Source: Octopus sinensis
Taxonomy: Eukaryota
Direction: 5' to 3'
DNA: 64,000 nt
NCBI RefSeq assembly: GCF_006345805.1
Contig: NC_043002.1
Span: 115,692,001 to 115,756,000, forward strand
Both the position numbers and the translations under genes were made by a program. Of the stretch, positions 12,562 through 61,664 are shown piece after piece. How positions within the stretch are numbered: position 1 is the first letter of the stretch; the number at the start of each line of letters is the position of its first letter. Below the pieces are notes generated by a model. The model was not told the DNA's origin, made no database searches, and saw nothing but the letters and a program-made list of their open reading frames with translations.

Positions 12562-13268
<707 letters not shown>

Positions 13269-20085: not shown

Positions 20086-20159
20086 GAGGGGTAAGAGAAA
20101 TATGTTAAGAATGAGGTTCATGGTGCAATCTAAACGTTTTAAGCCAAACCTACAATGAC

Positions 20160-21479: not shown

Positions 21480-21498
21480 TTACCTGCCATTGCTACAG
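21480..21498 (+). CDS. 19-nt micro-exon (LPAIAT+G), phase 0 to 1
   Basis: Branch-point-like CTAAT, then a T tract and ACAG acceptor; donor CAG|GTATGT. A 124-nt intron follows and the phase matches the next exon. Confidence 0.6.
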
Positions 21499-24400
21499 GT
21501 ATGTATTTTAATAATTCTGTAGCTGAAACTCAGTAGTACTTTAGTATAATTAACAGATTTTTTTTATCACTTCTCTTTTCTTTAGAATTGTGATTATTTA
21601 TTTCCATTTTCTTCTGTTCTAGTTGGCAGTAAATCAAAGAAAGAAATTGATTCCTTGGTCAGCCCCTTTAACAAGCCACTACCTAAACAGGATGAAGATA
21701 TGTTTATTGATGACAGACAGTCTTTTAATCAATGGGATCCAGTAAGATATTCTCTCTTTATATCGCTGTATAAATGTTATTATGTAGCTGTGTTATTTTT
21801 CACTCAGTCTTTGCACGGTCATCTGTCAACAAGAATCAAAATTGCCACAAAAATTGTATTTAGAAACAAGTTGGTATTTATTATGTAACTTAATAACTTC
21901 ATTTTGTCTGATACAACAAAGTCTGGGTGACAGAATGACTTCACACTGAAATTTGATTATTGAAACTACATATAACAATATGGCTGACGGGAAGCTAACT
22001 TCAGTTTCCAGTTTAATGGCATCCATGGGTGTTCAACAACTCTGAAATATCACAAGCAAAATTACATAACAAAATAGCTATATCTTAGTGTATACTAAAG
22101 TAAGGATAATTATTATTATTTAATTACCAGTGAGATTACCTCCTGCCTAATATCATGAACTTTATTATATTTCTATATAATACTTTGTCTAGTTATTCTG
22201 TCTCCCAAATGGTTAGCCTTAAATGTCAAAACAAAACAAAACATATCCATGGGAATAACATCAATTCAAAAAATAAGGTAGGACTATTTTGTATTTCACA
22301 TAAATAGTTTCTATTTTGTAAACCAAGATAAGCATAGCTTCATATTTCATCACCATCATCATCATTTGATATCCATGTTCCATGCTGGCATGGGTTCATA
22401 CTCCAATGTCTGCTTTGGCATGGTTTCTACAGCTGGAAGTCCTTCCTAATGCCAACCACTTTACAATGTGTAAGGAATGCTTTTTTATATGCCACCCACA
22501 CTACTGAGATTCCTTTGTAGCTCATAGAACTATGAAACCTGGATGTGGTGGTGGGTGGTCAGCTTAGGACTTGGAAACAAGGAGTTACACTAAAAGGGAA
22601 AGATTGTCAAAGCAGGTTCTTGCGGAGGATCTTCATAACTACTCCCATTTTGAAGAAGAGAAAGAGAAATGAATGATCAGTAGGGGCTGCAAAGAGATAA
22701 TAACAATGAAGTGCCCAAGTAGCCCCACGAGACACAAAGTGAGTAGAAGCAGGTGGTTTGCAACATTATATGGGGAGCATTTAAAATTTTCTGTTCTAAG
22801 GTTTGTTAGACTCATTAACCCATATCACACAATTTCAGTCCTAGTTCTATCTACATTTTGGTCACCAGCTTCTCGATTTATCAGCAGTTCCCTTATCTTA
22901 TATACTTAAATTTATTTGTAAGTTTTAGGATATACATATACCTAGAAATATATCTTTAAACCTATCTAGAATTGTATAGTGAACAATGCATGTATATAAA
23001 TTTTTATATGGGGTACATAAAAACAACTCATCATTATCATCATTTAACATCCGTTTTCTTTCCTGGCATGGATTGGACAGAGCTGACCAGCTGACCGGCT
23101 GTTCAGGCTGTAAGTCTCTTTTGGCATGGTTCCTACGGTTGGATGCCCTTCCTAATGCCAACCACTTTACAGAATGTATTCGGTACTTTTACACAACACT
23201 GGTATGGGTGCTTTTATGCAGCACTGGTACAAATGCTTTTTACATGGCACCAGCAAATACGAACCCGCAAGATTAGGAATGCTCAGCCGGAGAGGGTTGC
23301 AAGGAACAAGCCTATATGCAAGGGCAACCACCTTTTTACTTAACTTGAAATGTCTTTTCAAGCACAGTAAACCGCCAGGGGTCTCAGTCCCCTGTCACCT
23401 CCTCTGTGAGTCCCAATGTTTGAGACTTGAAGAGTATTGGTACATAATAAAAACAACTATATTTTTGAAATCAACACTGTTATTTTAAGTCGCTCATGGC
23501 CACAAGTTTTATGGAATTAATCTTAGAACATAACTGGTACTTTCTTTAGTAATCCCTGGGAATAAGAAAAGACAAAACTGATCCTAGCAAAATTTGAACG
23601 CTGTACAACTTAATACTGTTTGTACACTACTACTTTTAAATTCCCACATCATTACTCTTTTACTTATTTCAGTAATTTAATTATGACCATGCTGGAGCAC
23701 CACCTTTAGTCGAGCAAATCGACCCCAGGACTTATTCTTTGTAAGCCTAGTACTTATTCTATCAGTCTCTTTTGCCGAACCATTAGGTTACGGGGACGTA
23801 AACACACCACCATCGGTTGTCAAGCGATGTTGGGGGGACAAACACAAACACATAAGCACACACACACACACATACATACATATATATATATACACATATA
23901 CATATGACAGGCTTCTTTCAGTTTCCATCTACCAAATCCACTCACAAGGCTTTGGTCGGCCCGAGGCTATAGTAGAAGACACTTGCCCAAGGTGCCACAC
24001 AGTGGGAATGAACCCGGAACCATTAGAATAAGGAAAGTTAAATTCTTCCAGACAATACTCAAACCAGATAATCTTATTGTGATAATACATTCCCATCAAA
24101 GGTGGTGAGCTGGTAGAATCATTAGCATACCAAACAAAATACTTAGCGGCTTTTCATCCACCTTTATGTACCGAGCTCAACTTTGGCTTTCATCTTTTTG
24201 GATCAACAAAATAAGTACCAGTTGAGCACTGAGATCAATGTAATTGGCTCAACCCCTCCCTGAGCTTGCTGGCCTTGTGCCAAAATTTTAAACTCTCCCA
24301 CCAGAAATGTTTTATCTTTATAGTCCATATCCTGATACCAAATATAGTCTATCCATCTCATCTCTGTTCTGTCCCAGAGTTTTAACAACACTATTTTCAT

Positions 24401-27400: not shown

Positions 27401-30400
27401 AGCTTAATATCTCTCTTGACAGAATACTACAAGAAACTTAAAATGAAATTATCAGCATTTTGGCTCAAACCAGAGTTATCTAATTCCACTGGTCAAGTGG
27501 CTCCATTTTTGGGAGCAAAACAGACGCTTGCAAGAAATGCCATATCGCTGTTTTTGTGTTGAGCATATCAGACTGAATGTTCTTCTCACACAAACACATA
27601 TATGGCAGACATACACACATACATTATGAGGAGACAAACAAATCTTTTCATATTTTTTTTTTTTAATATTGTCTAATCTCTGTTAATTTTGACCTGAAAA
27701 ATGATTTTTGTAGTTCTGAACTCTTTCACGTCCAGCTTCATTCAATCATTCATTTTCATTGAACCTTTTATCACAAACTGCTGTTACTTTCTATCAACTT
27801 TATTTAGCATCCATTGTCAACTGAAATTTTTGTGTATTTTCATCATTTGTTTGCATCTGTTTTTGTATTGTGTGGTTTTCAATATTATTTTTGTATTGTT
27901 TCAATCCATGGAGACCAACATATTCTTTGTAACATAATTCATTTTGATATGCAAGTTATTATTATTATTATTATCTCTCAAATATTCCCTTTGACATTTA
28001 TTTTGCTTTAAAATCATATGAGTACAGTAATTCTTATCTGAATTAAGGAAACAATGTATTAACTTGATCCAGTTAATCTTACACATTCTTTTTTATTGGA
28101 AATATGCTGTAATTACGTTTAGCACTCGCAACAGTAAATTTCACCATTACACAATCAAAGTGGTATCAGTTTAAAAGTGTTATTATAACAGCTGCTATTG
28201 CCAGTGATAATGAGATTTGAATGTCATTGCTTCCCATTGGGTCGACTAACCATTACTGAGTGGTTGATAAATAACTCTCTTCAGCCATCAAATGCATTTT
28301 GGTTTCCCTATTTCTACTGCACTTGCTGATGGATCAAGTTCCTACTGCTAAGACCAAACAATGTCTAGAAGATTGTTTGCAATCCAGGCATGGACAAATT
28401 TGGTTACAGACCTTCCTTCCAACACCCATAAATGTGACAGTAAACTTCATTACCAGATGGGAATGAATGCTGGATGTAATAAGGAGGCTAGATTCCTCAT
28501 AGCATTTGATTTGAAACACATAAAAATTATGATGTAGGCATAGGAAAAAAAATTATGGTGATGATGACAGCAGCCGTCTGGATTTAAGACTTAATATCCA
28601 GTTATGGGGTGGGGGGTGAAGGTGTGTGGCCTAGTGGGTAGGGTGTTGTACTCATGATTGCAAGATTGTGGTTTCAATTCCCAGACCAACAATATATTGT
28701 GTTCTTGAACAAAACTTCATTTCACATTCTTCCAGTCCACTCAACTGTAAATGAGTAATCTTATGATGGACTGGCATTCTGTACAGGGGTGTGTTGGCTT
28801 GCTCTTTTAACCAATGGGCAGCATCCTTTAAATGCTAAAACAATGAGAGGAAGTCATTATGTCCAGCAGCATATAACAACATCCAATAGTCTGGTCAGTA
28901 CAGTGATATAGTGATATATATTCATCATCATCATCATCATCGTCGCCGTTTAACGTCCACTTTCCATGCTGGCATGGGTTTCACTGGGGCTGGCAAGCCA
29001 GAAGAGACTGCATCAGGCTCCAATCTGATCTGGCAAAGTTTCTACAGCTGAATGCCTTTCCTAATGCCAACCACTCTGAGAGTTTAGTGGGTGTTTTTTA
29101 CATGCCAGATGGTACTGGCACTGACCACGCTTGAATGGTGCTTTTTACATGACACTGGCATGGAGCCAGTCAGGTGGCACTGGCAATGACCATGCTCAAA
29201 TGGTGCTTTTTATGTGCCACCAGCATCGGACCAGTCAGCCAGCACTGGCATCAACTATGTTTGAATGGTTCCACCGGCATGGGAGCCAGTCAGGCAGTAC
29301 TGTCATTGGCCATGACAATAGCTTCACTTGCCTCAACAGGTCTTTGCAAGCACAGTTTATTGCCAAATAATTGAAGGGTACTCTTAAATGGGCTTGTTTT
29401 ATTGCACTGGCATAGGTCACAATTACAGTCTCACTTCTCAAGCACAACATACCTCCAGAGGTCTCGTCCACTTGTCATCGCCTTGGTGTGGCCCAACGTC
29501 TGAAGGTCATGCTTCACCACCTCATTCCAGGTCTTCCACTGGTTTCCTCTACTGCTAGGGTGTGACACTTTTTCACACAGCTGTCCTCATCTATATGCAT
29601 CACATGGCCATACCAGTGCAGTCAACTCTCTTGCACTCCACATCTGATGCTTCTTAAATCCAACTTTTCTCTCAGGGCCCTTACACTCTCTCGTGTGTGC
29701 ACAATGACATTACACATCCAGTGGAGCATACTGGCTTCATTCCTTGCAAGCTTACGCATGTCCTCAGCAGTCACGGCCCATGTTTCACTGCCATGTAGCA
29801 TGGCTATTCACACACATGATGATATCATCATCATTATGCATATATCTTTCTGTTCATTATGATACCTAATGTATTCATAATATAATAATTGTACTTATTC
29901 TGTAGGCAAAGAAAAGTAAAGGGTAGGAGATTTCTTTGTAGCACCCCTGAGCACTATATACAATTATTTCATTATTATATTATAAATATTAAGGACATTT
30001 AATTATAATGTACATTTTAATGCATTTAATTGTTTTAATACCTTTCTCTCCTTTATAATTTTACTTTTGATTTGTCAGCTTTTACATTTTAATTTATGTG
30101 TTTTAAATTTATTTTCAGTCCCCACTTTTTATGGATTTATACAATATCCATTTGGTTCCTGATGTAAGTTTTACATTTTATTACAATTAACCCCAAAAAT
30201 GCAGCTATTTCCTGTCATTATCTTTTACATTTTTCTAGTAATCACAGTACAAAGAAGGGTGTTGTCTTTGTACATGCATGTATAAATATAATGTCTTTTA
30301 ATTTCAAATCCTTTCATTGGGTTGTATTATTAAATAATAGCATTTTATCTGAGTGATAAGAAATAACTCTATTCTCAGGGGGGGGGGGTTATACTTGAAA

Positions 30401-33400: not shown

Positions 33401-36400
33401 AATGTTAACTAGGTATCATATGCATTGTATGATTTATGTAAATCACCCAAACACTCCTTTTACGAATCTAAATAGACTCACACCCAAACACACACTCACA
33501 CATGCAGACACTGACATATACATGAGTGTGAAAAAATGTTTCTGAAAGTCATGGGAGCTGTGCTGTTTTCTGACTTTGTAGGCATGCCCACATGTGTTAG
33601 ACACACGGGGCTCAAAAAGGTGCTCAGGGTGGTTATTGGCATGATGGTTAATAATTTTGTGGGTGTTTACCAAGCTAGTTGCCAGACGTCGGAGCTTCAC
33701 TGTACCTATTCCCAGGGAAGCAACACATTCAGAGTATGGTAGATGCCTGATGGAGGGTAAAGTGGCATCGAGTAATAGGGAACCAATGTTTTACTTTCTG
33801 TGTATACATATTGATTTTTCACTCAAACGTTTCATTTTATTTACAACAAATTAATTAACTTGTGAACTTTCTATATCTTCCCCATTTTTTTTTTAAGATA
33901 TTATTAACCAACAACAATCTTCTCAATCTGATTCTTCTGTTGATTTTTACTTCTTCTTAGACAAAATGGACTGATTTCACATACCAATCTAATACATTCA
34001 AATGGAAATTGATCATTGCTCTTTTGACAATTCTTCCAATTTAAACTGTTATTTGTGTTATATATTTCTTGAATGTTTTTTTCAAAAATATAAAGTTTAC
34101 TAAAATACAATTTAAAATTTTCTATATCTTCTTCAGGATACACAAGATTTTTCCTCTGATTTTATTGGAATGGAAGGAGTTATGGAAAAACTACCTATGA
34201 ATAAAAAAAAGTCAACCCTACTGAAAACTTGGAAAAGAAGATATTTTATGGCAAAAAATGGATGGCTTGTTTACTATGATGTACATCTATAATTTAATTT
34301 TTTTTTTTAAACAACTTTTTTTAAAAGCACACTCATTTATTGCAATTCTATTAATTATTGATAGGGTAACACCTGATGAATCAATGATGAGGGATAGATC
34401 AAATGTATTAGTCAAGTGTGTTTATTGATCCAGATTCAAGCAAGATCGTTTGCCATAGATTTGTATGTATATCTCTTCCCTTTAGAATTATTCTGCTCAC
34501 TGAGTGAATAGTGCTGGAACTTTTCTAGCTTTCACTGCATTAAGAAGCAGAAACATATTCCTGTTTGAACTGGAATCACAGATTTGTATTTTGCCAAGAT
34601 ATGATTCGATCATCATATTGCAAAGGAACACTTGTTAATATGTTATCTGTTTATACAAAGATGAACTGCGGCTTCGACAGTTTAATGTCTTAATCAAAAG
34701 AGAGAATGTAGGCGTTTGAACTATTAATGTTTTGGTTAGTTGACTAACATCTTAAACTTGTGAAAATCCCATCAGTTATGACATTTAAAACTTTTTTATA
34801 TAAAACACTTGAAAATACATAATTACTGAACAAAGCTATATATATATATAGAACACAAAGTTATTTTATTCTACAGAAGTTGAAAATGCACTGAGAGTAG
34901 TTAAAATATTTTTTATTAATACATTTCAAGCTTTAACTGGTTTCACAATTTACACTGATTATCAAAAGGTCCAAATAGAAAGACGTGACTTACGCCACAG
35001 CTGTCTTGCTTTTGACTAGGGTTTGAAGTTTGCGCTATCTTTATAGGAAGTTCATGGCCAAAGTTAGTATATGTTTTGAATAGGATTTGATTGGTAGAGG
35101 ATAGTCACATGACTGGTCTTAGAAATTTTTTTAGATTCCCCTTCTAGGTTCCATGTGTTAATACCAAGTGACAATGTTTGGCATTATAAGTTAAGGCTGA
35201 CACAGTTCTGTCAACTGAAATAGTAGCAGAATCACTATAAATGTTTTTGCTCCATGGATTTTAAACTATGTTAAATCACTACAAATGTCCTTTATTTTGA
35301 AGTTCATGAATTCATCTGACAAAAATGGTTTCTTTACAATATAATGTTTTCATTAACCAATTAAAGGAGTCGTTAGTAACATCCATAATGGATTGACACC
35401 TGTACCTCTACTGTTACTCATTTCTATTTTATTCAGCTGTCTCGGAATCTGCCATTCATAAATATTACAGACTGTATATTTAATATAATGTACATGTCTG
35501 AATAGCTCAAGAGCAGATTTCTTTACTCAACTGGGTCTAATTGTCTACAGACACTGCAAGAATATCATTCAGCCGGTACTTATGTGCCAAGTTGATATTT
35601 ACATAATATTGTTGTGCGCGTATATTATTCCAACCTAACAAGGTGCCTCAACTTAAATACCTAATTCAACTGAATCTTACTTTTATATATATATATTTAT
35701 ATATATACACATATATATATATTCTTTTTGCATATTTTTAGAATTGTGGAGACCAGCAACCCAGTGATGAGATATTGTTGATGGGAGGAACCATAACAGT
35801 TATGGGCAACAATGTAATTGGTATTGATGATGGTGTAAGTTTTTTTTTTACTTTATTTATTTATTTATCTATTTTGTTATGCTCTGATAGGTTTATAGTG
35901 AAGCCTGTGGCAATGGAGACCTCCAATGTTCTCCACCACCAGACTATATTCATGCTCACCACTATCCACAAGTCATGAGTCAGAGTAGCTGTTCCAGCAC
36001 ATCTCCCTCACCATCCTCCAGGGCAGCGCCTTTTCCATTTCATCAGTTGGGACCATGAGACAGTCTACATTACGGGAAATTGTACATTCCACTCAGTAAT
36101 TTAAAATTACTCCATATAAATTGCTCAGTTGAATTCTCATTTCTTTTAGAAATTCATAAAGATGCAGCTGCATTATTGAAACTAGATTATTTAATTATGC
36201 ACAAAGGTTGTAAGGTTTAGGCTATGTGGTCATGAATTTAAAACCTGTCACTCCAGTCTTATAAACATACCTTATAACTCTGCTTTCAGCAGTCTGTATG
36301 GTTGATATCAGATTCCATTCTTTTTTCAAGGTTGAGTGATTTGAAGTAAGAGAGGCATCCAACAAAAGAAGAGTGAATGTTCAATTTACTAGAAATTGCC

Positions 36401-40945: not shown

Positions 40946-40992
<47 letters not shown>

Positions 40993-41485: not shown

Positions 41486-41520
<35 letters not shown>

Positions 41521-44500: not shown

Positions 44501-44619
44501 GATGCCTGTACAAACTAGCCAGTCCAGATTCCACTTACGCAGATATACTAACAAGGATTTGGAATTGTTATATTTAAATCGAGTCACAAATCCTAGCATC
44601 ATGCATCGCTTTTTAGAGT

Positions 44620-44718
<99 letters not shown>

Positions 44719-50700: not shown

Positions 50701-53118
50701 CAGGTGTGCAAATTACATGAGTTTTTATGGTACTTAACACTTATATATCTTCCTGGTGGATAACAAGATATTCTCCAATGAACAAAAAGACTGTAAACAT
50801 GGTTCATATGGGTGTGAAAGCTAACTTTTAAACAATAAAATTATTCTAGAGGACTACCACAAACAACACTGTTGCATGGATTGATAGACTTCCTTGTTGC
50901 ATGGATTGATAGACTTCCTAATTTAGAATGCTGTGAATGCTGGTGATATTGATATAAATGCCGCATTTTTCAAGGTGACTGTTGGTCACTGCTTCTCTTT
51001 TACATGGTTTTCATTTCCCTAAGTAAGTTGTAGAATGGCATAAGACTTGGGTAAAGAATAAACACCAGATCATGGTATCATCTCTTGTACATGGATGATC
51101 TAAAGCATTTCATCAAAGGTAATGAGCAACTGGAATGATTTCTAATTATAATAAAACAATTTAGTGATGATACTGAAGTAGAGTTTTGCCGTTATAAATG
51201 TACTGATGCCACATTCTTTAAAGGATAATCTTGAAAATATGCAAGAAATAAAGCCTAAAGAAAACTACAAATATTTAGCCATGTAAAGTATTACAGGGTC
51301 AATACTCTGATACAGAATGACCTCTGGGGATAACCGAGTAACCCCACTGATAATAATAATCATTTAGGCACAAGGCCAACAATTTTTGAGTGAGGAGGTT
51401 AGTAGGTTGCATTGACCCCTGTACTTGACTGGTACTTTATTTTATCAACCTTTGAGTGATAAAAATCAAAATTGATCTCAGTATGATTTGAACTCAGAAC
51501 ATAAAATAATAATAGCTAAGAAAAAAAATCAAAAGCATTTTTGAGTTGGCTGAAAACAAGTTGATGAACCAAGCATGCAGGATCCCAAAAAGTGGTTTGG
51601 CTATACCAGTGAAAACAGGGGTTAGAGAGAATTAGTGAGGTGATGGTGTTGGATTAGCTTATATTCTCAGAAAGGTGCTTTCTGTTTAAAGCACTTAGTA
51701 TGCACAAAGAAACAACAAAAGCCAGTATTTTATATCCTTACTGTGCAATGAAACATTGGTTTTAAATTTTGGCACAAGGCCAGCAACTTCAGAGGAGGAG
51801 GTAAGTTGATTACATTGACCACAGTGCTCAACTGGTACTTATTTTATCGACCCTGAAAGAATGAAAGGTAAAGTTGTCCTCAGCAGAATTTGAACACAGA
51901 ATGTAAAAATGGATGAACTGTCACTAAGCATTTTGCCCGGTGAACTTACAACTCTGCCAGCTCACCACTTTACTGTGCAATAAAATATTACTGATAATAA
52001 TATTGTTGATATTTTCATCTTATTAAAAAAAACTGTAAAAGAGTCAAGTTCTGTTCACTTATCTTGTTACAGAATATTCTGATTGTTGAAATGGGAAGTA
52101 TGTCAGTTAGAGCTGGCATTTTGAAAGAAAATGGTAAGTACTCTTTTCCAAACATATTACCACTAATTTCCCTTCTTTAGCCATCCTCTTCCATAACCCT
52201 TTGTCCTTACTTCCCACTTCACATACATTTTTATTTAACATGGTTTCTTTTGTCCTAGACAAGGTCACCTACTCTGGAGGATATTACAAAGAAAATAATC
52301 TTGAAAAGCTTTAATTCTTTAGGTCTTATCAATGATCAGCTAGAGTACAACTCTAACTCAAATATAGTTTTTGCTATCCATTTGTTCTTTTTTTCTCTTT
52401 ATCTTATATTTCTTTCACCACAATAATACCTCTGTATAACCATTTGTATTGTTTTAGCAGTAACATAGAGCTTAGTTTCGCAGAAAGTAATTTGCCTAAA
52501 ACAGCAACTATTCTGATATAAAACTGATATAAGATAGTCATGAACTTTTGTCTTGTTTAAACTATTTTCAAGTGCCTCAGTACATAACCATAAGTGAATA
52601 ATAGACGTCTGTGTGAATATGTATGTACACACACACTCATACACTGATATTTTCATTATGTACAACAGAAGCAGTATTACTTTAAAATAGCAATCTGTAT
52701 ATCCTATTCAAAGCAGATTTAATACTATATGTCTCAGGAGAAATACTACAGTTAATTAGGCCTTTCATGGTGTATCTACTTTTAATATGATACTCAGATT
52801 GCACATGGCTTAGTGGTAAGGGTATTCAGCTTGTGACCATAAGGTCATGAGTTCAATTCCCAGCCTGCATTGTGCCCTTGAGCAAGACACTTTATTTCAC
52901 GTTGCTCCATCCACACAGCTGGCAAAGATGAGTTGTACCTGTATTTCAAAGGACCGACCTTTTCACATTTTGTTTCACGCTGAATCTCCAAGAACTACAT
53001 TAAGGCTACACATGTCTGTGGAGTGCTCAGCCACTTGCATGTTAATTTCACAAGCAAACTGTTTCATTGATCAGATGAACTGGAACTCTTGTCATCATAA
53101 CTGACAGAGTGCCATGTA

Positions 53119-53182
<64 letters not shown>

Positions 53183-56100
53183 GGAGTAAACACATAAATG
53201 TGAAACAAGGTGGAAAAAAGAGTACTCCAATACCAGTGGTAGAGTAATATGCTTTATTTAAAGCAGCAGAAAATTCAACAAAATCTGTTACTCTGAGTTT
53301 CTCGTTGCCGTTCATCAGACAGTTTTTTTCTAACAAAAACTGTCTGATGAACAGCAACGAGAAACTCAGAGTAACAGATTTTGTTGAATTTTCTGCTGCT
53401 TTAAATAAAGTATATATATATATATTTACACACATAATTAGCATCATTTGAAAGCTGCTAAAATTATGTAAAATACATTGTGACCAGGATGTATAACAAC
53501 ATCCAATAGTTTCATTGAACATGAGATCACATCATATAAATGTAGCATGTGTCTTCTACTATAGCCCCAGGCCACCTAATGCCTTGTGAGTGAATTTGGT
53601 ATATAGAAATTGTAGAAAACCTACAATATATACGTGTGTGTATGCATGCATGTGTGTGCACACATATGCATAAGTGTTAATTCCACGCTTAACACCATAT
53701 GAGAAAAACAGTTATGATGTTGACATTGTGACTGGTCACTCCGCACTTTCTGAATAAAAAAATAAGTGGCAATGAGAGGAACACCTGGCCATAATGTCCC
53801 ACCTCAAAAGATTCCCCATCCGACCTATGTTGGCATGGAAAAACAAATGTTAAACAAACAAATTAATATAAGTTAAAGCCATCTGAATGCTAGTGACACT
53901 TGAAGAGGAGAGGGGACGTGTTGCAAGATTCACAGACAGCAGATGGACCTGTGCAGCTGCTGAGTGGTAGCCAAGAGATTGGAAAAGGCCTCTTGGAAGG
54001 CATCCATGACAATGGGAATGCAATTTAGTCAAGCAATTTGGATCGAGTTGGAAAAGAATGGCACAATCAAGACAAAATTGGAAGTGCATTGTGACCAATG
54101 GTGTATCACAGCATCTGATGGTCTAATCAATACTGTGATATATATATCCAGCTTATTCTGCTGTAAAACACCATCCAAACTGAACAATAAAAAATAATGT
54201 GATAATTTTCTGTTTTGATTATAATCAACAAAATTGAAATGGTTTTTGATATTTTTCTGATTATTATTTTATTCCTATGATTTGGATAGTACTTCCAGTG
54301 AATCACTGTTAGAAGCCTCCTCTTCTAATTTCAATTAATCTATAAGCTGACATATAGATCAGTTATACAGTTTCCAATTCAGAAAACCTATTTCTTCTTA
54401 ATTTCCCTAAAGCCTACTTATTGCTAAATTTATCCACTATGATTTGTAACATCTGTATTTTTGTTTAATGATGTTTATGTACCAAAAGCTTGAGCAGGTT
54501 TTTAAATTCTGGCAAATCCTGATATTCTTTCAGCCAATTAAGTGATACACTTTTACTTGTTCTTTTCTTTATATGCTCAGACATTATACACATTTTTCCC
54601 CCTCAATATCCACAGACAAACATTTCCAACGTTTCATTGACTCCACACTTTCTGTTACAGTCACTTTGCCTCAGATCTTCTTCCCTAGTGTTGTTGCAGT
54701 AAACTATTCTGAAAAGAAGCATTTTGTTGGATTTGAAGCTTATAAACCCAAGAATCGTCTTTCTTCAAAGATCATGCATGTATTTGGACTTTCGGACAAA
54801 GTAGATAAGGTAAGAGATCACTGTAATACCTTTTCTTGCTAACATTCAATTGAGGAGGATGTGGAATGAAACAGTGGATGCTCACATTTCAAGAAAAGCA
54901 TTTTTTTATAAAGGTTTTGGCATTTATAAGCAGCCCTCTTTCCCTCTTTCTGGCGAGGATGTAGTCAACTGGCTAGTGTGTCTGCCAGAACGGTAGGTGA
55001 CTAGGTGAGAGGTGGGTTTCCTGAAGTTGGTATTGCAAACCATAAGGTCATTTGCATCGCAGAATTCCAGGAGCCTGGTTCCCTCCTCATTGCGAGAACC
55101 AAAACAGTAGCCTCCATGTACACCATGGAAGCCCCCGATGTGCCATCCAACATGTCCATTGAAGTCACCTGCCACAAAGAGAAGGTCCATGTCATTTGTC
55201 AACGAGGTAGTCTGCAATAGGGTGTCGTAGAATATGCTCACACACAAATGCACATACACATATATGATCAATTAACAACTACTTTTCCATACTTTCATGG
55301 GTCAGGTGAATTTATTGAGGCAGATTTTCTTTGGCCAGATGCCCTTCCTGTCACCAACTCTGACCTGTTTCTAAGCAATGTTGTATTTTCCCATAGATAG
55401 ACATGTTTTTCATAGAAGGCTGGAAATGAACAATCTCATTTGTATGACGATGATGATTACAACCATCACAAGATGTCTACACATGGGTATACATAAACAC
55501 AAACACTCTCACAAATATAACTATACATACATTAATATATGTATACATTCACACACATGAAGTGTGTGAAGGTGCATGGCTCAGTGGTTAGAGAGTCGAG
55601 CTTACGATCATGAGGTTGTGAGCTCGAATCCCGGACCGGGCTGTGTGTTGTGTTCTTGAGCAAGACACTTTATTTCACGTTGTTCCAGTTTACTCAGCTG
55701 TAAATGAGTTGCAACGTCACTGGTGCCAAGCTGTATCGGCCCCTTTCCCTTGGATAACACTCGTGGAATGGAGAGGGGAGGCCGGTATGCATGGGTGACT
55801 GCTGGTCTTCAATAAACAAACTTGCCCGGACTTGTGCCTGGGAGGGTAACTTTCTAGGTGCAATCCCATGGTCTGTGTCATGACCGAAGGGGGTCTCAGA
55901 ACACTCACTCACACACACATACACACACACACACATATATATATCATCATCATCACTTAACATCTGTTTTCTATATTGGCATGGGTTGGATGGTTCAACC
56001 AGAACTTGTGAGGTCAGGGGCCGGACCAGGCTCCATAGTTTGTCCATTTCTATGGCTGGATGCCCTTCTTAATGCCAACCAATCCACAGAGTGCACTGGG

Positions 56101-57683: not shown

Positions 57684-57714
<31 letters not shown>

Positions 57715-60700
57715 TTGTCCCCCCAAAATCACTCGATAACTGATGCTGGTGTGTTTACGTCCCCATAACTTAGTGGTTCAGCAAAAGAGACCGATAGAAT
57801 AAGTACTAGGCTTACAAAGAATAAGTCCTGGGGTTGATTTGCTCGACTAAATGCAGTGCTCCAGCATGGCCAAAGTCAATATATCTGTATATACATCTAC
57901 ATTTGTCAGTATACATGGCTAGATGCTTTTATCTTGTAGTTCACATGCTATAATTTACCACACCCTAACAAACCACAAGAAGTCCATTACTATTATTTTA
58001 TAAATACTATTAATAAACACCAGGTGTTCAAGTATGGAGCTCTGCTTGTTGTAGACTAGTGTTAGTAACAATATATTTACAACATATCAATATATTTATA
58101 AATATTGATATAGGCAAAACGTGCTGTGGCATATACATGAGAAGAATCAACTTTGTCTTTCAGCCTTTCAGAGTTGATAGAAATATGTACCAGTTGAGTA
58201 CTAGGATTGATATAATCAATTTGCATCCTCCCTCACAATTGCTGGCCTTGTGCCAAAACTTGACATCAATATGGACAGTGAAAATGCATTTTGTTTAAAA
58301 TTCCATTGAGTTATCAAAGCAGTTTTTCTCATAAAAACAAGCACTTGAACTTTCAATATATTAGAAAATATTATTTTTAATTTCTTCTCTTTTATTGAGA
58401 AAAATGAATCATTCTGATTTTACTTTTTAAAAATCTGTTTTTTATAACAGACTGTATTGAATGAATTGACCTATTTAAACATAGGTAAAATGTGTGTATG
58501 TGTGTGTGAAGTTATTTTTCATACATATCCAGTGTTTGTATAAAAGTTGTTGCTTATTTTTAATTTTGTTTGGAGCCAAGCTTCTGCCAAGTGTCTGTGT
58601 AAAAATCATTGCTTTTTTGTAATTTTGTTTCGTGCTAAGTTTCTGATAAAGTTCTGAATGTTAGATTTTTCTCTTCAAATTGTTTATGGAAAAGACTAAA
58701 ATTGTTGAAATCTTTTTTATATTTCAGTTCAAAATTGAATACGAAATCTTTCCATCCGTTTTCTCAGCTATCTTCCAGGATTTGAAAATAAAACCTCCAG
58801 ATTATCAAGTAAGAAATTACAACCTTCCTTTGCTGAACGGGTGAAAATTTATGTAAACCTAATTTGAGAGGTAGGCCCCGAAACAGCATGCATTCTCTCC
58901 TGATGACCCCATACACTTGCTGGCTTCTAGTATGCAGAGTTCTTGACTGGTAGTACTTGCATGTGTAAGTTGTTAGCAAGACATCGATATCGTTAGGAAT
59001 TATATCATTAGATCAACACATAATGAAGATAAATTTTAGACTATCAAAAGCCACATTGTTATCAGTGTAATGTTTTTATCCTTTTCTAGAAGATACATGT
59101 TCATAATTTTATAAGTTACAAAACAAACATTTAGGCAGCGTTGACTCTGACTCAAATGCTAGAGTCATGTGTGCTGCTTGCATCTGTTTACAAAAAGCAA
59201 TCTAAATTCTCTCCTACCACTTAAAAGAATATGTGTGTGTATATTGAAGGATAATGTACAAGTATAGGTGTATATGTATATACAGGGTGCTGACAGTATT
59301 CATTTGCTTGATGACTATCTCAGGAAAAACTAAAACAATGTTTTTATTTTTTGTGATGTTTTCATCAAATTTGAGTCAGTTTGTCTTCATGACATGTTCT
59401 GTCAATCTCCCTCAATGAACCCACCTTTGACCTTGATAACAGCCCCCAGGCAACCTTAGAACTGGCCACAGGCTTTCATCACTATCTCCCATTTTAGACC
59501 CTTTGAAGGCCCTTGTAATCCTGGTCCTCAGCTTACCTTTCATATTGCAACTAAATTTATTGGTCTCTCATTCCACTGTGCCTCACACAAACAAGTTGAG
59601 TGGGTTGCAGTCAGGCAAGTTGGGAGCCCAAATGTCAGGTGCTGTATAATTGAAGATATAATTGATGTATAATTGATAACACATATTCTGATAATACCCA
59701 GAGGATGTCCAATTTCATGCAGACCTCATGAACTCACTGCATAATTCAATAACCAACTATCATTCCTTGATGTTTTGATGTGAAAGACAGAGGTGGGTTT
59801 CAAAACATCAAAATATTGAAAGCCATCAGCTGCTGAACTGTACTTAAAACTATCTCTCTATCTTGTGTTCAGTGTGTGTAGAAGGGAATTGTCTAATGCC
59901 TATGTTATCAGGCAAATTATTCTTCAGTATGTCAGATTATATAGACAAAATGAGTCACTTGAAGTTTGTATTCCTGAATTATACCCACCGTCAAGTATCA
60001 ACCCTACTCTGGACATATTGTTTCCCTGGGTGTGGACACATTAAAGCTCCAATGTCTGGTAACTGACTTGACAGACATCCACAAGATTATTAACCATCTT
60101 TTCAACGACAACCTTTGGGCATCTTTTTGAATTCCATATTTCTAACATTCATTGACATGCTTACAAAATCAGACAACACAGCATCCATGACTTCCAGAGA
60201 CATTTTTTCACACTCAGAATTGCTGAAGCTTAGAATAAACTACCCACGTCAGTTGTTATCTGTCAGGACACTATATCCTTCAAAACTGCCAAGCTTCTTG
60301 AAATTCACCAACAGTACACCTGATGCCCCTAACCCCTGATGCCCCTAACCCCCGTATTTTTCTTTTTTAAAGACTCGTCTGCTGTTCACTTCTTGTGCAT
60401 ATTCTCTGTAGTCTTCATGCAGCCTTGGTTTCTTTCTCTGATGAATTGTAGTACACCTGGGCACTGTATATGATAAGTTCTTTATATATTACAAATACCT
60501 TAACCATTATATGAAGCTACAGTCGTTCTTGAGTTAGAGATTAAACCAAAACCCATTGTGTCTCAATTTGTCTGAAAAAAAAATTCAGAGAATTTGTAGT
60601 GTATTAGAAACTGTGTTTGAAAGTAACACCAAATTTTTAAAATTCTTTACCTGCATTAAATTTAGCCAACAATGGCAAGAACATAAGAGTGGCATCTATA

Positions 60701-61664
60701 TCTGATGAATCTGTGGAATATTTTATGAGAGAGAAACCAAAGTTAGAAGAGAGGAAAATAAGAAGCCTTTGCAGGAGGGGAGGAAATATGTGTCCGGACC
60801 ATCTCAACATGTATATAGTGCAAGAAAGAAAAATCATCCAAAGAATTGTCTTATATATCGCATTACACACATCTAACAACAATGAATTATGCCCTAGAAG
60901 AGAAGGTACTACAAAATGAATGTCACTTGTTATCACCTTTTCTTTTTATTAATTAAATGATCTTTTATCTTTCATGTGTTTCAGTCATTAGACTGTGGCC
61001 ATGCTGGGGCACCACCTTGAAGAATTCTAGCTGAACTAATCAACCCCAGTACTTATTTTCTTTTTAAGCTGGTATTTATTCTATTGATTGTTTTTGCCAA
61101 ATTGGTAAGTTTTGAGGACATAAACAAACCAACAATGGCTGTCAAACAGTGGCAAGGGGACAAACACAAATGTAGACACAAAGACTAACACACACACACA
61201 CACGATGGGATCCTTTCAGTTTCCATCTACCAAATCTACTCAAAAAGCTTTGGTAGAAGACACTTGCCCAAGTGCCATGCAGTAGGACTGAACCTGACAC
61301 CCTGTGGTTAGGAAGCAAACTTCTTAGCACACAACCACCACAATTTTTATAATTACAATATATTTTTATAGAATATTTCATTAGTTATATGATTCCAATT
61401 TGTTTATTTTGTATGCATTTTTTCTTTCCACAATAGTCTATAACATGTTTTTGTCTTTATTTTAAAGGTCATGCTGGTTATGCCTTTGAATATTAGTAAA
61501 AAAGATAAGGAAAATATTATGAAAATATTGATGAACCGGTTCCATGTACAAGGAGTGTGTATGGTAACACAAGCTATCACAGCTCTCTATTCCTACAAAT
61601 CCAAATCTGGTATAATGGTTGATATTGGTGAAAGACTGGAGGTTATTCCTATTTATGATGGAAA
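21480..61664 (+). CDS. Multi-exon gene (partial, open at both ends): PH domain fused to a divergent actin-like (Arp) domain
   Basis: Exons 21480-21498, 21623-21741, 30119-30163, 34137-34280, 35742-35834, 46698-46838, 52073-52133, 54661-54809, 58728-58808 and 61468-61660/61664 join in one frame with matching phases: [46 protein letters not shown]|[15 protein letters not shown]|[48 protein letters not shown]|[31 protein letters not shown]|[47 protein letters not shown]|[21 protein letters not shown]|[49 protein letters not shown]|[27 protein letters not shown]|[66 protein letters not shown] count the 19-nt and 119-nt segments as one linked unit where I say nine exons; there are ten segments if the micro-exon is counted separately. 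Confidence 0.88.
21623..21741 (+). CDS. Exon, linker upstream of PH (GSKSKKEID...NQWDP), phase 1 to 0
   Basis: Acceptor ttttcttctgttctag, donor gtaaga, open frame (overlaps ORF 21655..21888). Confidence 0.75.
23657..24021 (-). mobile_element. SINE family C
   Basis: Matches 7706-8112. Confidence 0.85.
24555..26625 (-). mobile_element. Truncated RTE-clade LINE (RT, 3' UTR with ~65-bp subrepeats, (GAT)n tail)
   Basis: [33 protein letters not shown] and LHGSETW across ORFs 26280..26492, 25655..26125 and 25402..25689. Confidence 0.92.
28920..29815 (-). mobile_element. RTE LINE 3' fragment
   Basis: HGSETW-region homology to 25400-25540, plus the tail. Confidence 0.8.
30119..30163 (+). CDS. 45-nt exon ([15 protein letters not shown]), phase 0 to 0
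   Basis: Strong acceptor tttattttcag and donor gtaagt; frame-preserving and stop-free. No motif support. Confidence 0.6.
31000..33100 (-). mobile_element. Possible highly decayed DNA transposon (hAT-like), carrying the 31899 palindrome
   Basis: Coding-like composition on the - strand with many stops; no motif I can pin down. Confidence 0.25.
31899..32173. repeat. Fold-back palindrome, about 135-bp arms, 3-nt loop (CTC)
   Basis: Inner ~57 bp are perfect; the outer part has about 5 mismatches and a 4-nt indel. Confidence 0.93.
33500..33780 (-). mobile_element. CR1/L2 3' end relic
   Basis: [21 protein letters not shown] resembles the CR1 RGH..KL.K......R..FFS terminus. Confidence 0.55.
34137..34280 (+). 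CDS. Exon, PH domain N-terminal strands (EGVMEKLP...KTWKRRYF...LVYYD)
   Basis: Acceptor tcttcttcag, donor gtacat; 48 codons; PH beta1-beta3 pattern (G-x-x-x-K, WKRRYF, L-x-YY). Confidence 0.9.
35742..35834 (+). CDS. Exon, PH domain middle ([16 protein letters not shown]...IGIDDG)
   Basis: Acceptor catatttttag, donor gtaagt; 31 codons, phase 0 to 0; P-x-x-x-I-x-L pattern of PH beta4. Confidence 0.88.
36711..37465 (+). repeat. Composite duplicated block, copy 1 (copy 2 at 55943-56660)
   Basis: Same order and junctions of RTE tail, AT-rich spacer and decayed SINE in both copies. Confidence 0.85.
39000..39470 (-). repeat. RTE-type tail with 3-4 tandem ~90-110-bp units
   Basis: Repeated ggcaccagcactggtgaggtctgttttggcatggtttttaca. 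Confidence 0.75.
39955..40355 (+). mobile_element. SINE family C
   Basis: Matches the family consensus seen in the other copies. Confidence 0.8.
40530..40820 (-). mobile_element. RTE LINE 3' tail
   Basis: Tail consensus as at 18605 and 24555. Confidence 0.75.
41570..43672 (-). mobile_element. 5'-truncated, frameshifted Penelope-like element (RT + GIY-YIG), Neptune type
   Basis: ORF 42916..43692 has [26 protein letters not shown] and HP-H-K motifs. A Cys linker CNDSRCGTC lies near 42590-42625. The GIY-YIG is split over ORFs 42413..42607 and 42244..42483 ([10 protein letters not shown] / KYVGQTG). Confidence 0.92.
43686..43924. repeat. Perfect palindrome, 118-bp arms, 3-nt loop (ATC)
   Basis: Arms are exact reverse complements about position 43805. 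Confidence 0.97.
43832..43894 (+). ncRNA. Type I hammerhead-ribozyme-like motif (identical mirror copy on - strand at 43716-43778)
   Basis: Stem I agataa/ttatct; core CCGAAGA (U4C variant); stem II gatg...catc with inner gtgg/ccac; GAAA at 43876-43879; stem III act-cag-agt; predicted GUU cleavage after 43888. There is one extra nucleotide before GAAA. Confidence 0.6.
44021..44264. mobile_element. MITE-like inverted repeat (~110-bp arms)
   Basis: atgaagtcaaaccaaatagttatattttgaaatc...gcaagacc versus the reverse complement of the right arm; several mismatches are TG/CA at former CpGs. Confidence 0.7.
44626..44912. repeat. Compound (TA)n/(TATG)n microsatellite; similar tracts at 470-635, 6340-6540, 9135-9185, 9395-9442, 12690-12785, 40820-40990, 53120-53180, 63300-63380; (AAT)n at 5340-5400 and 62315-62370
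   Basis: Visible directly; these tracts are the source of the YI/CV/TH low-complexity ORFs. Confidence 0.98.
45680..46345 (-). mobile_element. RTE LINE 3' fragment
   Basis: ORF 45972..46289 reads [10 protein letters not shown]...GRGRPRKTW. Confidence 0.85.
46698..46838 (+). CDS. Exon, PH domain C-terminal strand and helix ([22 protein letters not shown]) plus linker
   Basis: Acceptor tgaatag, donor AAG|gtaaga; 47 codons; conserved Trp helix S-x-x-E-x-x-x-W-x-x-A-L. Confidence 0.9.
47859..48205 (+). mobile_element. Helentron-associated (HINE/DINE-1-like) non-autonomous element
   Basis: 5' acaagagcactc...acctcctccaaggc, an (ACAG/ACAA) tract, and a 3' hairpin acctccgcctt...aaggcaaaggt. Confidence 0.55.
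48325..48620 (+). mobile_element. R4/Dong-like non-LTR RT C-terminal relic
   Basis: YKYLGIL...[24 protein letters not shown]...[17 protein letters not shown]. Confidence 0.7.
48896..50788. mobile_element. Non-autonomous DNA element with ~235-bp near-identical terminal inverted repeats
   Basis: 48896-49131 is the reverse complement of 50555-50788. There are internal repeats of a ctcatgtaatttgcac-like motif and no transposase ORF in the track. Superfamily and TSD are not resolved. Confidence 0.85.
51030..51280 (+). mobile_element. R4/Dong-like RT relic
   Basis: HLLYMDDLK ... KQFSDD ... YKYL. Confidence 0.65.
52073..52133 (+). CDS. Exon, actin-fold phosphate-1 motif ([17 protein letters not shown])
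   Basis: Acceptor cttgttacag, donor G|gtaagt; aligns with actin ALVVDNGSGMCKAGFAG; phase 0 to 1. Confidence 0.9.
53252..53410. repeat. Near-perfect palindrome, 76-bp arms, 7-nt loop, between (TA)n tracts
   Basis: One mismatch (53309/53353) at a CpG. Confidence 0.95.
53280..53327 (-). ncRNA. Type I hammerhead-ribozyme-like motif (mirror copy on + strand at 53335-53382 with one stem II mismatch)
   Basis: Reads ctgt CTGATGA a cg-gcaa-cg a GAAA ct-cag-ag TA acag: canonical CUGAUGA core, GNRA-capped stem II, GUA cleavage triplet, stem I ctgt/acag. Position 10.1/11.1 is A-A, which is non-canonical. Confidence 0.62.
54661..54809 (+). CDS. Exon, actin-fold subdomain 1/2 ([12 protein letters not shown]...FVGFEA)
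   Basis: Acceptor ttctgttacag, donor AAG|gtaaga; aligns with actin PRAVFPSIVG...YVGDEA; phase 1 to 0. Confidence 0.9.
54935..55235 (-). mobile_element. RTE LINE APE endonuclease fragment
   Basis: AGDFNGHVG...[24 protein letters not shown] (ORF 54924..55271). Confidence 0.85.
55567..55898 (+). mobile_element. tRNA-derived SINE family B, CORE/MIR-like (further copies 13305-13640 -, 28615-28905 +, 52800-53100 +)
   Basis: Head ggctcagtggttagag..gctcgaatccc; central ttgagcaagacactttatttcac..ccagt..actcagctgtaaatgag. Confidence 0.78.
56757..57124 (-). mobile_element. SINE family C
   Basis: Matches 23657-24021. Confidence 0.8.
57660..57872 (+). mobile_element. SINE family C, 3' half
   Basis: Matches 1-109 and 13050-13268. 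Confidence 0.8.
58728..58808 (+). CDS. Exon, actin-fold helix ([27 protein letters not shown])
   Basis: Acceptor ttatatttcag, donor gtaaga; 27 codons; positionally equivalent to actin IWHHTFYNELRVAPEEH. Confidence 0.85.
59690..60940 (-). mobile_element. Decayed CR1/L2-like LINE
   Basis: Degenerate RT segments (SCLT..., D..AFD-like region) antisense to ORFs 60115..60339 and 59863..60066, with many stops. Confidence 0.5.
60965..61338 (-). mobile_element. SINE family C
   Basis: Matches the family; ends about 130 nt upstream of the last exon. Confidence 0.78.
61468..61664 (+). CDS. Exon, actin-fold connect and phosphate-2 region (VMLVMP...[29 protein letters not shown])
   Basis: Acceptor tttattttaaag; aligns with actin [66 protein letters not shown]. 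The donor is ambiguous (61661 GA or 61665 GT). Confidence 0.92.

What the first reader, a model, noticed from the sequence alone, without database searches (positions are those of the whole stretch)
21480..61664. PH domain fused in-frame to a divergent actin fold, invisible in the ORF track as a whole
Seen: short exons scattered over 40 kb splice with consistent phases into a complete PH domain followed, after a ~25-aa linker, by the N-terminal half of an actin-family fold. Established: conventional actins and the named Arps (Arp1-10) are stand-alone folds, and PH domains commonly bind phosphoinositides or small GTPases. Inference: this is a membrane-targeted actin-like protein that could nucleate, cap or anchor filaments at lipid sites. 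I know no gene symbol for it. I recall similar uncharacterised PH+actin models in marine invertebrates, so it may be an ancient, unstudied family rather than a lineage-specific one. A polypyrimidine tract with a CTGAC branch-like motif at the very end of the window (63960-64000) suggests the next exon starts just beyond it.
Basis: partly seen in the sequence, partly recalled or inferred. Interest (0 to 1): 0.85.

Follow-up and report, generated by a model that had tools for sequence, protein, structure and literature searches.

The report
Octopus PH-domain actin-related protein gene
The window holds nine small exons of an annotated but unstudied octopus gene whose protein ends in a lipid-binding-type PH domain fused to a divergent actin fold, an architecture found here in cnidarians, molluscs, arthropods, nematodes and echinoderms.

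Summary
Nine + strand exons (21623-61660) have AG acceptors, consistent phases and GT donors on the eight internal introns. Together they encode 343 residues that are 100% identical to residues 1916-2258 of Octopus sinensis XP_036360167.1, "uncharacterized protein LOC115213538", 2473 aa. The spliced peptide passes Pfam thresholds for PH and Actin.

One exon (58728-58808) was not listed. The PH-actin module is the C-terminal ~500 aa of a much larger protein, and its first ~1915 residues are not encoded in the window. The last exon most likely ends at 61660, at a conserved intron position where this sequence reads GA instead of GT.

The same PH+actin architecture occurs in Cnidaria, Mollusca, Annelida, Nemertea, Brachiopoda, Priapulida, Arthropoda, Nematoda and crinoids. 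Every named hit is uncharacterised or mislabelled by automatic annotation, and five full-text searches found no paper on it.

A relative's predicted structure (pLDDT 87) shows a canonical PH domain followed by a full actin fold, closest to conventional actin rather than a solved Arp. The nucleotide pocket is conserved but altered, the D-loop is shortened, and lateral-contact residues are not actin-like.

The most likely role is a membrane-recruited, non-polymerising actin-related protein. That role is inferred, not shown.

The parts
21623..21741 (+). Coding exon, residues 1916-1955 of XP_036360167.1 (V)GSKSKKEID...NQWDP. It holds the first part of the conserved WDP..L...LY motif that precedes the PH domain. 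It starts with 2 bases that complete a codon begun in an exon upstream of the window.
   Evidence: tblastn gives 100% identity. Acceptor ttctag|TT and donor CCA|gtaaga are seen. The acceptor is inferred from the RefSeq junction KKD|VGSK.
30119..30163 (+). Coding exon, [15 protein letters not shown] (residues 1956-1970).
   Evidence: tttcag|TCC ... GAT|gtaagt.
34137..34280 (+). Coding exon, DTQDF...[37 protein letters not shown] (residues 1971-2018). It covers PH strands beta1-beta3, including the K...K-R-R basic signature.
   Evidence: Pfam PH; family alignment.
35742..35834 (+). Coding exon, [31 protein letters not shown] (residues 2019-2049), the middle strands of the PH domain.
46698..46838 (+). 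Coding exon, [47 protein letters not shown] (residues 2050-2096). It covers the last PH strand, the C-terminal helix with the invariant Trp, and the ~22-aa linker.
   Evidence: the Trp is invariant.
52073..52133 (+). Coding exon, [20 protein letters not shown] (+1 base). These are the first strands of actin subdomain 1 with the phosphate-1 loop, equivalent to actin LVVDNGSGMCKAG.
54661..54809 (+). Coding exon, [50 protein letters not shown]. It covers subdomains 1/2 with a shortened D-loop.
58728..58808 (+).
   Evidence: tblastn with P0014, P0011, P0015 and P0022. Splice sites tttcag|TTC ... CAA|gtaaga.
61468..61660 (+). Coding exon, [12 protein letters not shown]...[17 protein letters not shown](G) (residues 2194-2258). 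It includes the Q137 equivalent and the altered phosphate-2 loop DIGER. It is the last exon of the gene inside the window.
   Evidence: The exon boundaries sit at the same codon positions in a bivalve-like genomic contig, L002.
61661..61668 (+). Donor site at the conserved intron position, reading GAAAGTAA, so GA where GT is expected. The nearest GT (61665) would add 4 nt and shift the frame relative to the RefSeq protein (IYDG|FAIEGG).
   Evidence: Sequence; RefSeq protein; L002 has GACG|GTGAGT at the same position.
14718..14779 (+). Doubtful alternative 5' exon-like segment, MG*EDIQYAEIDMSVMTLEY. It resembles the first 20 residues of the fragmentary model P0001, but it has an in-frame TAG at codon 3 and an awkward donor.
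   Evidence: It is not present in the RefSeq isoform.

Best explanation
Shown. The window is an internal 64-kb piece of Octopus sinensis gene LOC115213538, or of its orthologue in a very close relative. It is mostly intron filled with LINE and interspersed-repeat debris. Nine small exons encode residues 1916-2258 of a 2473-aa protein. These cover a short conserved WDP..L...LY motif, a canonical seven-strand-plus-helix PH domain, a ~22-aa linker, and the first ~170 actin-equivalent residues of a complete actin fold, which continues beyond the window. This PH-actin module is the conserved C-terminal unit of a family found here in cnidarians, protostomes and crinoids. The N-terminal extensions vary in length, and in octopus the extension has no detectable similarity outside a second cephalopod-like protein.

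Inferred mechanism. The PH domain carries the basic K-Xn-K-R-R pattern on beta1-beta2 that is typical of phosphoinositide-binding PH domains. I propose it recruits the protein to a phosphoinositide-rich membrane. The actin-like domain probably binds nucleotide: G13, Q137, G156 and G301-G302 are invariant, and D11(D/E), D154 and E214 are kept. Its chemistry is changed, because H161 is deleted in every member, G158 is usually Arg and K336 is usually Tyr. It probably cannot build a normal F-actin lattice, given the shortened, unconserved D-loop and lateral-contact residues that are only 17% actin-like. Its barbed-face cleft is the most actin-like of the contact surfaces scored. It therefore most likely acts as an Arp-type unit that docks one filament end or an actin-binding partner at the membrane, with the long N-terminal region serving as a scaffold.

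The confidence of 0.5 blends about 0.97 for the gene and family identification with about 0.3 for this specific mechanism.
For: Identity:
- 343/343 residues are identical to XP_036360167.1 across nine colinear exons.
- Splice sites and phases are canonical apart from the last donor.
- Pfam PH and Actin both score above their cut-offs.

One protein rather than two genes:
- The architecture appears in more than 100 cluster representatives that match both parts of the profile.
- Named gene models come from many phyla.
- A 1881-nt contig (L001, SRR26439019) carries PH and actin in a single uninterrupted ORF.

Fold:
- The AlphaFold model of Physella P0013 has pLDDT 87.4 and pTM 0.75, with seven strands and a helix followed by a full actin fold.
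- Foldseek against the PDB gives TM 0.88-0.92 to conventional actins at 25-28% identity.
- phmmer against the PDB returns conventional actins for all of the top 60 sequences, at E 1e-41 to 1e-49.

PH class: the family's PH profile hits ARHGAP25, ORP11, FARP1, beta-spectrin, cytohesin/Grp1, FAPP1 and TAPP1 PH domains, at E from 5e-10 to about 1e-5. K21, K36 and R38 are conserved in at least 90% of 27 sequences.

The pocket is the most conserved set (0.69 against 0.53 overall). H161 is deleted in 17/17, G158 is Arg in 14/17, the D-loop columns are 42% gaps, lateral contacts are 17% actin-like, and the barbed cleft is 50% actin-like against 32% overall.
Against: - No experiment or expression data on any family member was found, so lipid binding, nucleotide binding and any actin interaction are inferred from sequence only.
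- Most PH domains do not bind phosphoinositides specifically (general knowledge).
- The basic signature is degraded in the nematode members, so lipid binding cannot be essential to every member.
- A residue that is Arg in Grp1 on beta3/4 (position recalled from memory) is not conserved here.
- I could not inspect how the PH domain packs on the actin domain in the model.
- The octopus junctions rest on a RefSeq computational model, not on reads I examined.
- The GA at the last donor could mean a defective allele or an assembly error.
Confidence: 0.5

Rival explanations
1. The module is not a cytoskeletal regulator. The actin-like domain would be a structural or ATP-sensing subunit of some other complex, as Arp4-Arp8 are in chromatin remodellers or Arp11 is in dynactin. 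The PH domain would serve as a protein-protein interaction module.
For: The phosphate-2 loop is altered and H161 is lost in all 17 members scored. The PH basic signature is lost in nematode members while the module is retained. A long N-terminal region with no recognisable domain is typical of scaffolds.
Against: By sequence and fold the domain is closer to conventional actin than to any solved Arp. The barbed-face cleft is more actin-like than the average position. The PH basic signature is conserved in the cnidarian, mollusc, annelid, arthropod and echinoderm members.
Confidence: 0.25
2. It is a genuine polymerising actin isoform tethered to membranes. It would co-polymerise with cytoplasmic actin or form its own filaments, in the way filactin carries an essentially conventional actin domain.
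For: The model shows a full actin fold at TM about 0.9 to actin. The plug region keeps actin's length, with no gaps. The adenosine loop LSGG.T.LPG is conserved.
Against: Identity to actin is only 25-28%. The D-loop is shortened by about 8-9 residues outside cnidarians, and its columns are 42% gaps. Lateral-contact residues are 17% actin-like. H161 is deleted and G158 is Arg. Filactin's actin domain is described as nearly identical to actin (PMC2441452), which this one is not.
Confidence: 0.1
3. The PH part and the actin part are two neighbouring genes that gene predictors have wrongly merged.
For: I saw no octopus transcript reads directly. The exons are tiny and spread over 40 kb. The cuttlefish model P0014 is clearly faulty, since it lacks the exon at 46698-46838.
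Against: The same colinear fusion is found in independent annotations from many phyla. It is also found on short contigs almost filled by a single uninterrupted ORF: L001 at 1881 nt, and contigs of 2.9-4.2 kb that encode 665-1212 aa. All phases match, and there is no stop or start signal between the parts. The linker is conserved in length.
Confidence: 0.02
4. In the sequenced individual, this copy is splice-defective or a pseudogene, because the conserved donor after 61660 reads GA instead of GT.
For: The window reads GATG|GAAAGTAAC, whereas L002 has GACG|GTGAGT at the same codon phase. Using the next GT, at 61665, would shift the frame.
Against: All 343 codons in the window are intact and identical to the RefSeq protein, which itself reads across this junction. 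Positions +3 to +7 match the donor consensus perfectly. GA-AG introns are documented in animals, and about 19% of annotated ones have RNA-seq support (PMC7072748). A single-base assembly error is equally possible.
Confidence: 0.07

Closest known systems
Conventional actin (e.g. beta-actin)
   Same: Complete four-subdomain actin fold, with TM 0.88-0.92 and rmsd about 2.5 A in the model of a relative. G13, Q137, D154, G156, E214 and the G301-G302 adenosine loop are conserved.
   Different: Identity is only 25-28%. The D-loop is short, H161 is deleted, G158 is Arg and K18 is Arg. Lateral-contact residues are not conserved. An N-terminal PH domain is present, and in octopus it is preceded by about 1900 further residues.
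Actin-related proteins Arp1-Arp11 and 'orphan' Arps
   Same: A divergent actin fold with a retained but modified nucleotide pocket and altered polymerisation surfaces. It most plausibly works as an end-binding or scaffold subunit rather than a polymer. 'Orphan Arps' are a recognised category (PMC2441452).
   Different: It does not group with any solved Arp: the top 60 PDB sequence hits and the top 50 fold hits are all conventional actin. No named Arp that I know of carries a PH domain (from memory).
Dictyostelium filactin; primate POTE-actin fusions
   Same: An actin domain at the C-terminus of a larger multidomain protein. NCBI's pipeline even mislabels the Hydra and Mya members as 'POTE ankyrin domain family member J'.
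   Different: Filactin's actin domain is described as nearly conventional and its extension is not a PH domain (PMC2441452). POTE proteins carry ankyrin repeats fused to an actin retrogene and are primate-specific (from memory). The PH-actin family is old and its actin domain is divergent.
Phosphoinositide-binding PH domains (cytohesin/Grp1, TAPP1, FAPP1, ARHGAP25)
   Same: Seven-strand sandwich plus C-terminal helix with the invariant Trp. A K...(K)-x-W-K-R-R-[YF]-F beta1-beta2 pattern. Profile hits at E from 5e-10 to about 1e-5.
   Different: Lipid binding and specificity are untested. The signature is lost in nematode members. Apart from this family, I know of no PH domain followed by an actin fold (from memory).

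Membership tests
Actin superfamily fold (Pfam PF00022 Actin) | Significant match to the Actin profile above the curated cut-off | tested here: met
   The window's spliced peptide scores 46.2 bits against a cut-off of 27. Full-length relatives score 162-196 bits over profile positions 4-407 of 410.
Actin superfamily fold (Pfam PF00022 Actin) | Four-subdomain actin fold in three dimensions | tested here: met
   AlphaFold model of relative P0013, pLDDT 87.4. Foldseek gives TM 0.88-0.92 to solved actins. The window itself encodes only the first ~170 actin-equivalent residues.
Conventional actin | High sequence identity to actin (more than about 80% among conventional actins, from general knowledge) and an intact DSGDGVTH phosphate-2 loop | tested here: not met
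   Identity is 25-28%. The loop reads D-I-G-E/H-R with H161 deleted in 17/17 members.
Conventional actin | A full-length D-loop and conserved longitudinal and lateral filament contacts | tested here: not met
   D-loop columns are 42% gaps. Lateral-contact positions are 17% identical to actin.
A named Arp subfamily (Arp1, 2, 3, 4, 5, 6, 8, 10/11) | Closer to that Arp than to conventional actin | tested here: not met
   The best 60 distinct PDB sequences by phmmer, and the best 50 Foldseek hits, are all conventional actins. That the PDB holds structures of these Arps is my own knowledge. A proper phylogeny with a full Arp set was not run.
PH domain (Pfam PF00169) | Match above the curated cut-off, with the seven-strand sandwich, C-terminal helix and conserved Trp | tested here: met
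   32.7 bits against a cut-off of 25.1. Strands lie at 15-21, 36-43, 46-50, 60-63, 68-73, 76-80 and 86-90, with a helix at 94-106 in the model. The Trp is invariant.
Phosphoinositide-binding PH domains | Basic K-Xn-(K/R)-X-R signature on beta1/beta2 | tested here: met
   The octopus sequence is [22 protein letters not shown]21, K36 and R38 are conserved in at least 90% of 27 sequences. The signature is degraded in nematode members.
Phosphoinositide-binding PH domains | Measured lipid binding | not testable with these tools
   This needs liposome flotation, a lipid overlay or SPR on the purified domain.
PH-actin family (defined here) | A colinear PH domain, a linker of about 20 aa and an actin fold on one polypeptide, with the WDP..L...LY pre-motif | tested here: met
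   The window's exons align colinearly with P0010-P0015 and P0022. More than 100 representatives match profile positions about 2-509.

The most novel reading that the evidence does not exclude
The PH-actin proteins are a previously unrecognised, ancient class of actin-related protein, absent from every vertebrate among the named hits seen here. They would couple phosphoinositide signalling directly to an actin-fold seed: a membrane-tethered pointed-end mimic that nucleates or anchors filaments independently of Arp2/3 and formins.
Probability: 0.15. Interest if true: 0.85.

Novelty: new variant of a known kind. Interest (0 to 1): 0.6.

Why it matters
Actin-related proteins are a small, intensively studied set. 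Each class that has been worked out turned out to run a core machine, such as Arp2/3, dynactin or the chromatin remodellers.

This is a conserved actin-fold protein hard-wired to a PH domain. It is found here in cnidarians, protostomes and crinoids, but in no vertebrate, Drosophila or Caenorhabditis sequence among the named hits. That would explain why it has never been studied. It may represent an unexamined way of linking membranes to actin.

The question is directly testable, because family members exist in tractable animals such as Hydra, Clytia, Owenia, snails and oysters.

For genome annotation, the case shows how automatic naming ('actin', 'POTE ankyrin domain family member J', 'Arp8', 'Arp10', 'SETMAR') hides a coherent family.

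Tried and rejected
I used an alignment of database homologues instead.
- A beta-actin tblastn hit at 60029-60115 ([20 protein letters not shown] 4.5) looked like the missing exon. I rejected it because it has no usable splice sites. The real exon, 58728-58808, was found with homologues.
- The segment at 14718-14779, which matches the N-terminus of P0001, was considered as the first exon. It has an in-frame TAG and is absent from the RefSeq isoform. P0001 also contains pieces that lie in the intron after 35834, so it is probably a fragmentary ab initio model.
- The N-terminal 1915 residues of the octopus protein were searched for in the window and not found, even with word size 2 and exact pentapeptides. 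They show no similarity to other family members except P0023.
- The look-up of encoding contigs had no record for P0022, and the cuttlefish gene range (about 132 kb) was too long to fetch.
- A weak minus-strand hit at 15413-15454 to RCPYGSQKVVDSLK (E about 0.1) is flanked by stop codons and was treated as chance.
- Five literature searches found nothing on the family.


Full report
**What the window is**

The window is AT-rich (32-41% G+C) eukaryotic DNA. It is full of microsatellites, interspersed repeats and reverse-transcriptase fragments. No long ORF covers the finding. The coding signal sits in stop-free stretches of 45-197 nt on the + strand.

**Checking the observation**

A concatenation of the three most obvious pieces retrieved P0001, a fragmentary model from a close relative. 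It also retrieved single-exon ORFs from other animals. tblastn with these and with beta-actin located most of the exons, and the flanking sequence showed splice sites.

The first spliced peptide passed both Pfam thresholds. PH scored 32.7 bits against a cut-off of 25.1, and Actin scored 46.2 bits against 27.

A second database search with that peptide returned mollusc proteins of 360-529 aa. Those that cover the junction carry PH and actin on one chain.

The final model has nine exons:

| Exon | Coordinates (+ strand) |
|---|---|
| 1 | 21623-21741 |
| 2 | 30119-30163 |
| 3 | 34137-34280 |
| 4 | 35742-35834 |
| 5 | 46698-46838 |
| 6 | 52073-52133 |
| 7 | 54661-54809 |
| 8 | 58728-58808 |
| 9 | 61468-61660 |

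All acceptors are AG, all donors but the last are GT, and the phases are consistent. The 21623 acceptor is inferred from the RefSeq junction; itself used 21630.

**Identity of the gene**

A profile of five mollusc homologues was scored against 1.84 billion cluster representatives. More than 100 proteins matched the whole profile, PH plus actin. In most, the match lay at the C-terminus of a longer protein of 600-3000 aa.

One of these, P0022, is XP_036360167.1, [quoted passage not shown], 2473 aa. Its residues 1916-2258 are identical to the translation of the nine window exons.

- The nine exons total 1026 nt: 2 bases that complete a split codon, 341 whole codons, and 1 base that starts another. 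That fits 343 residues.
- The first 1915 residues are not encoded anywhere in the window.
- The protein continues for 215 residues beyond the last window exon.

The window is therefore an internal slice of a gene that runs off both ends.

The N-terminal region has no Pfam domain in the relatives scanned. The octopus N-terminus matched only P0023, a second cephalopod-like protein.

**Is the fusion real?**

I could not see octopus reads, but three lines of evidence support the join:

- The join is phase 0 with GT/AG sites, and it is present in the RefSeq protein.
- The same PH-linker-actin order appears in independent gene models from many phyla.
- It also appears on short contigs almost filled by a single uninterrupted ORF. 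L001, for example, is 1881 nt from SRR26439019, its ORF is open to the 5' end, and it encodes PH plus a full actin domain.

Genomic copies in octopus and in L002 have introns at these positions. Such intronless contigs therefore look like transcripts. I rate the two-genes reading at about 2%.

**Distribution**

Named members come from the following groups:

| Group | Members seen |
|---|---|
| Mollusca | gastropods, bivalves, cephalopods |
| Annelida | Owenia, Dimorphilus |
| Nemertea | Lineus, Tubulanus |
| Brachiopoda | Lingula |
| Priapulida | Priapulus |
| Arthropoda | Ladona, Megalurothrips, Ixodes, Chamberlinius, Panulirus, Petrolisthes |
| Nematoda | Trichinella, Trichuris, Meloidogyne, Pristionchus |
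| Echinodermata (crinoids) | Antedon, Anneissia |
| Cnidaria | Hydra, Clytia |

All are labelled uncharacterised or hypothetical, or carry misleading automatic names: actin, POTE ankyrin domain family member J, Arp8, Arp10, SETMAR. No vertebrate, Drosophila or Caenorhabditis protein appeared among the named hits. I could name only a sample of the hits, so absence from those groups is not proven. Five full-text searches found no paper on the family.

**Anatomy of the module**

An AlphaFold model of the Physella member was built with a 27-sequence alignment and is confident (pLDDT 87.4, pTM 0.75). It shows seven strands and a C-terminal helix, which is a PH fold, followed by a full actin fold.

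- Foldseek against the PDB returns conventional actins for the top 50 hits, with target-normalised TM 0.88-0.92, rmsd about 2.5 A and 25-28% identity.
- phmmer against the PDB also gives only conventional actins in the top 60, at E 1e-41 to 1e-49.

The domain is therefore a divergent actin-like protein that does not belong to a solved Arp subfamily.

Seventeen family members were aligned with beta-actin.

- *Nucleotide pocket.* This is the most conserved part (0.69 against 0.53 overall). G13, Q137, G156, G301 and G302 are invariant, and D11 (D/E), D154, R210 and E214 are kept. However, H161 is deleted in all 17 members, G158 is Arg in 14, K18 is Arg in 16, and K336 is mostly Tyr.
- *Filament contacts.* The D-loop is about 8-9 residues shorter outside cnidarians, and its columns are 42% gaps. 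Lateral-contact positions are only 17% actin-like.
- *Barbed face.* The cleft positions are 50% actin-like, against 32% overall.

The PH profile hits lipid-binding PH domains: ARHGAP25, ORP11, FARP1, beta-spectrin, cytohesin/Grp1, FAPP1 and TAPP1. The beta1-beta2 segment, [21 protein letters not shown], carries the K-Xn-(K/R)-X-R pattern. K21, K36 and R38 are conserved in at least 90% of 27 sequences. The pattern is degraded in nematodes.

**How it most likely works**

This section is inference. The PH domain brings the protein to a phosphoinositide-rich membrane. The actin-like domain binds nucleotide but does not polymerise like actin. It uses its relatively actin-like barbed face to dock a filament end or an actin-binding partner, in the manner of an Arp. 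The long N-terminal region acts as a scaffold.

I put about 0.3 on this specific mechanism and about 0.97 on the gene and family identification. The rivals are:

- a non-cytoskeletal Arp-like subunit (0.25);
- a genuinely polymerising tethered actin (0.1);
- a splice-defective copy (0.07);
- two merged genes (0.02).

**The last donor**

The RefSeq protein reads ...IPIYDG|FAIEGG. In L002, a genomic contig of another mollusc, the same exon ends GAC G|GTGAGT, which is phase 1 inside the Gly codon. In the window the equivalent site reads GAT G|GAAAGTAAC, so the intron would begin with GA.

That adds 4 nt and would shift the frame.

- Positions +3 to +7 of the GA site match the donor consensus.
- GA-AG introns are known in animals (PMC7072748).
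- The possibilities are a real GA-AG intron, a polymorphism or an assembly error. Spliced reads would decide.

**Comparison with what is known**

The module works most like an Arp and is built like a PH-tagged divergent actin. It is not a conventional actin, because identity, the phosphate-2 loop and the D-loop all fail. It is not a member of a solved Arp subfamily. Filactin and the POTE-actin fusions share only the idea of an actin domain at the end of a larger protein (PMC2441452).

I class it as a new variant of a known kind. The octopus gene model is already in RefSeq, so the sequence itself is not new. The family as a biological entity appears to be undescribed.

Noticed in passing
window 61661-61668: At the intron position conserved with another mollusc, the donor reads GAAAGTAA, so GA instead of GT. 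The options are a GA-AG intron, a variant allele or a base error. The nearest GT, at 61665, would shift the frame.
   Followed up: partly
window 14718-14779 (+): This segment is 90% identical to the first 20 residues of the fragmentary model P0001, but it has TAG at codon 3. It is either an alternative 5' exon that is dead in this genome, or simply conserved intron sequence picked up by an ab initio predictor.
   Followed up: partly
window 35891-36208 (+): The C-terminal 50 residues of P0001 ([18 protein letters not shown]..., ...[17 protein letters not shown]) match stretches inside the intron after exon 35742-35834. They suggest read-through or spurious exons in that model, or a truncating alternative 3' end.
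   Followed up: no
window 19795-20121 (-), 25655-26125 (-), 42916-43692 (-): Intronic reverse-transcriptase fragments. PF00078 scores 52.3 bits at 19795-20121; the other two copies score 29.3 and 27.8 bits, just under the 29.6 cut-off. The 25655-26125 copy also carries a PHD-type zinc finger. The copies near 19.4-20.1 kb and 25.6-26.3 kb are about 90% identical direct repeats.
   Followed up: partly
window, many sites (e.g. 12843-13040, 18669-18866, 24623-24820, 40583-40780, 46335-46532): A dispersed repeat family of about 200 nt. Its translation gives the recurring [12 protein letters not shown]... ORF fragments on both strands, so it is probably a SINE-like element. Long (TATG/TACA)n-type microsatellites lie at 40.8-41.0 kb and 44.6-44.95 kb.
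   Followed up: partly
P0097 (Pristionchus fissidentatus): This nematode model continues after the actin domain into a long hydrophobic, seven-transmembrane-like region. It is probably a merged gene model rather than a real architecture.
   Followed up: no
P0052, P0053, P0060 and relatives (ENA contigs of 3-17 kb): Long PH-actin proteins of 900-1630 aa are encoded on unnamed environmental or assembly contigs. The source organisms are unknown and could extend the family's range.
   Followed up: no
window 15413-15454 (-): A 14-aa minus-strand match (KCPYASQEVVDSFR) to a part of the family protein that lies downstream of the window. E is about 0.1 and it is flanked by stop codons, so it is probably chance.
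   Followed up: partly
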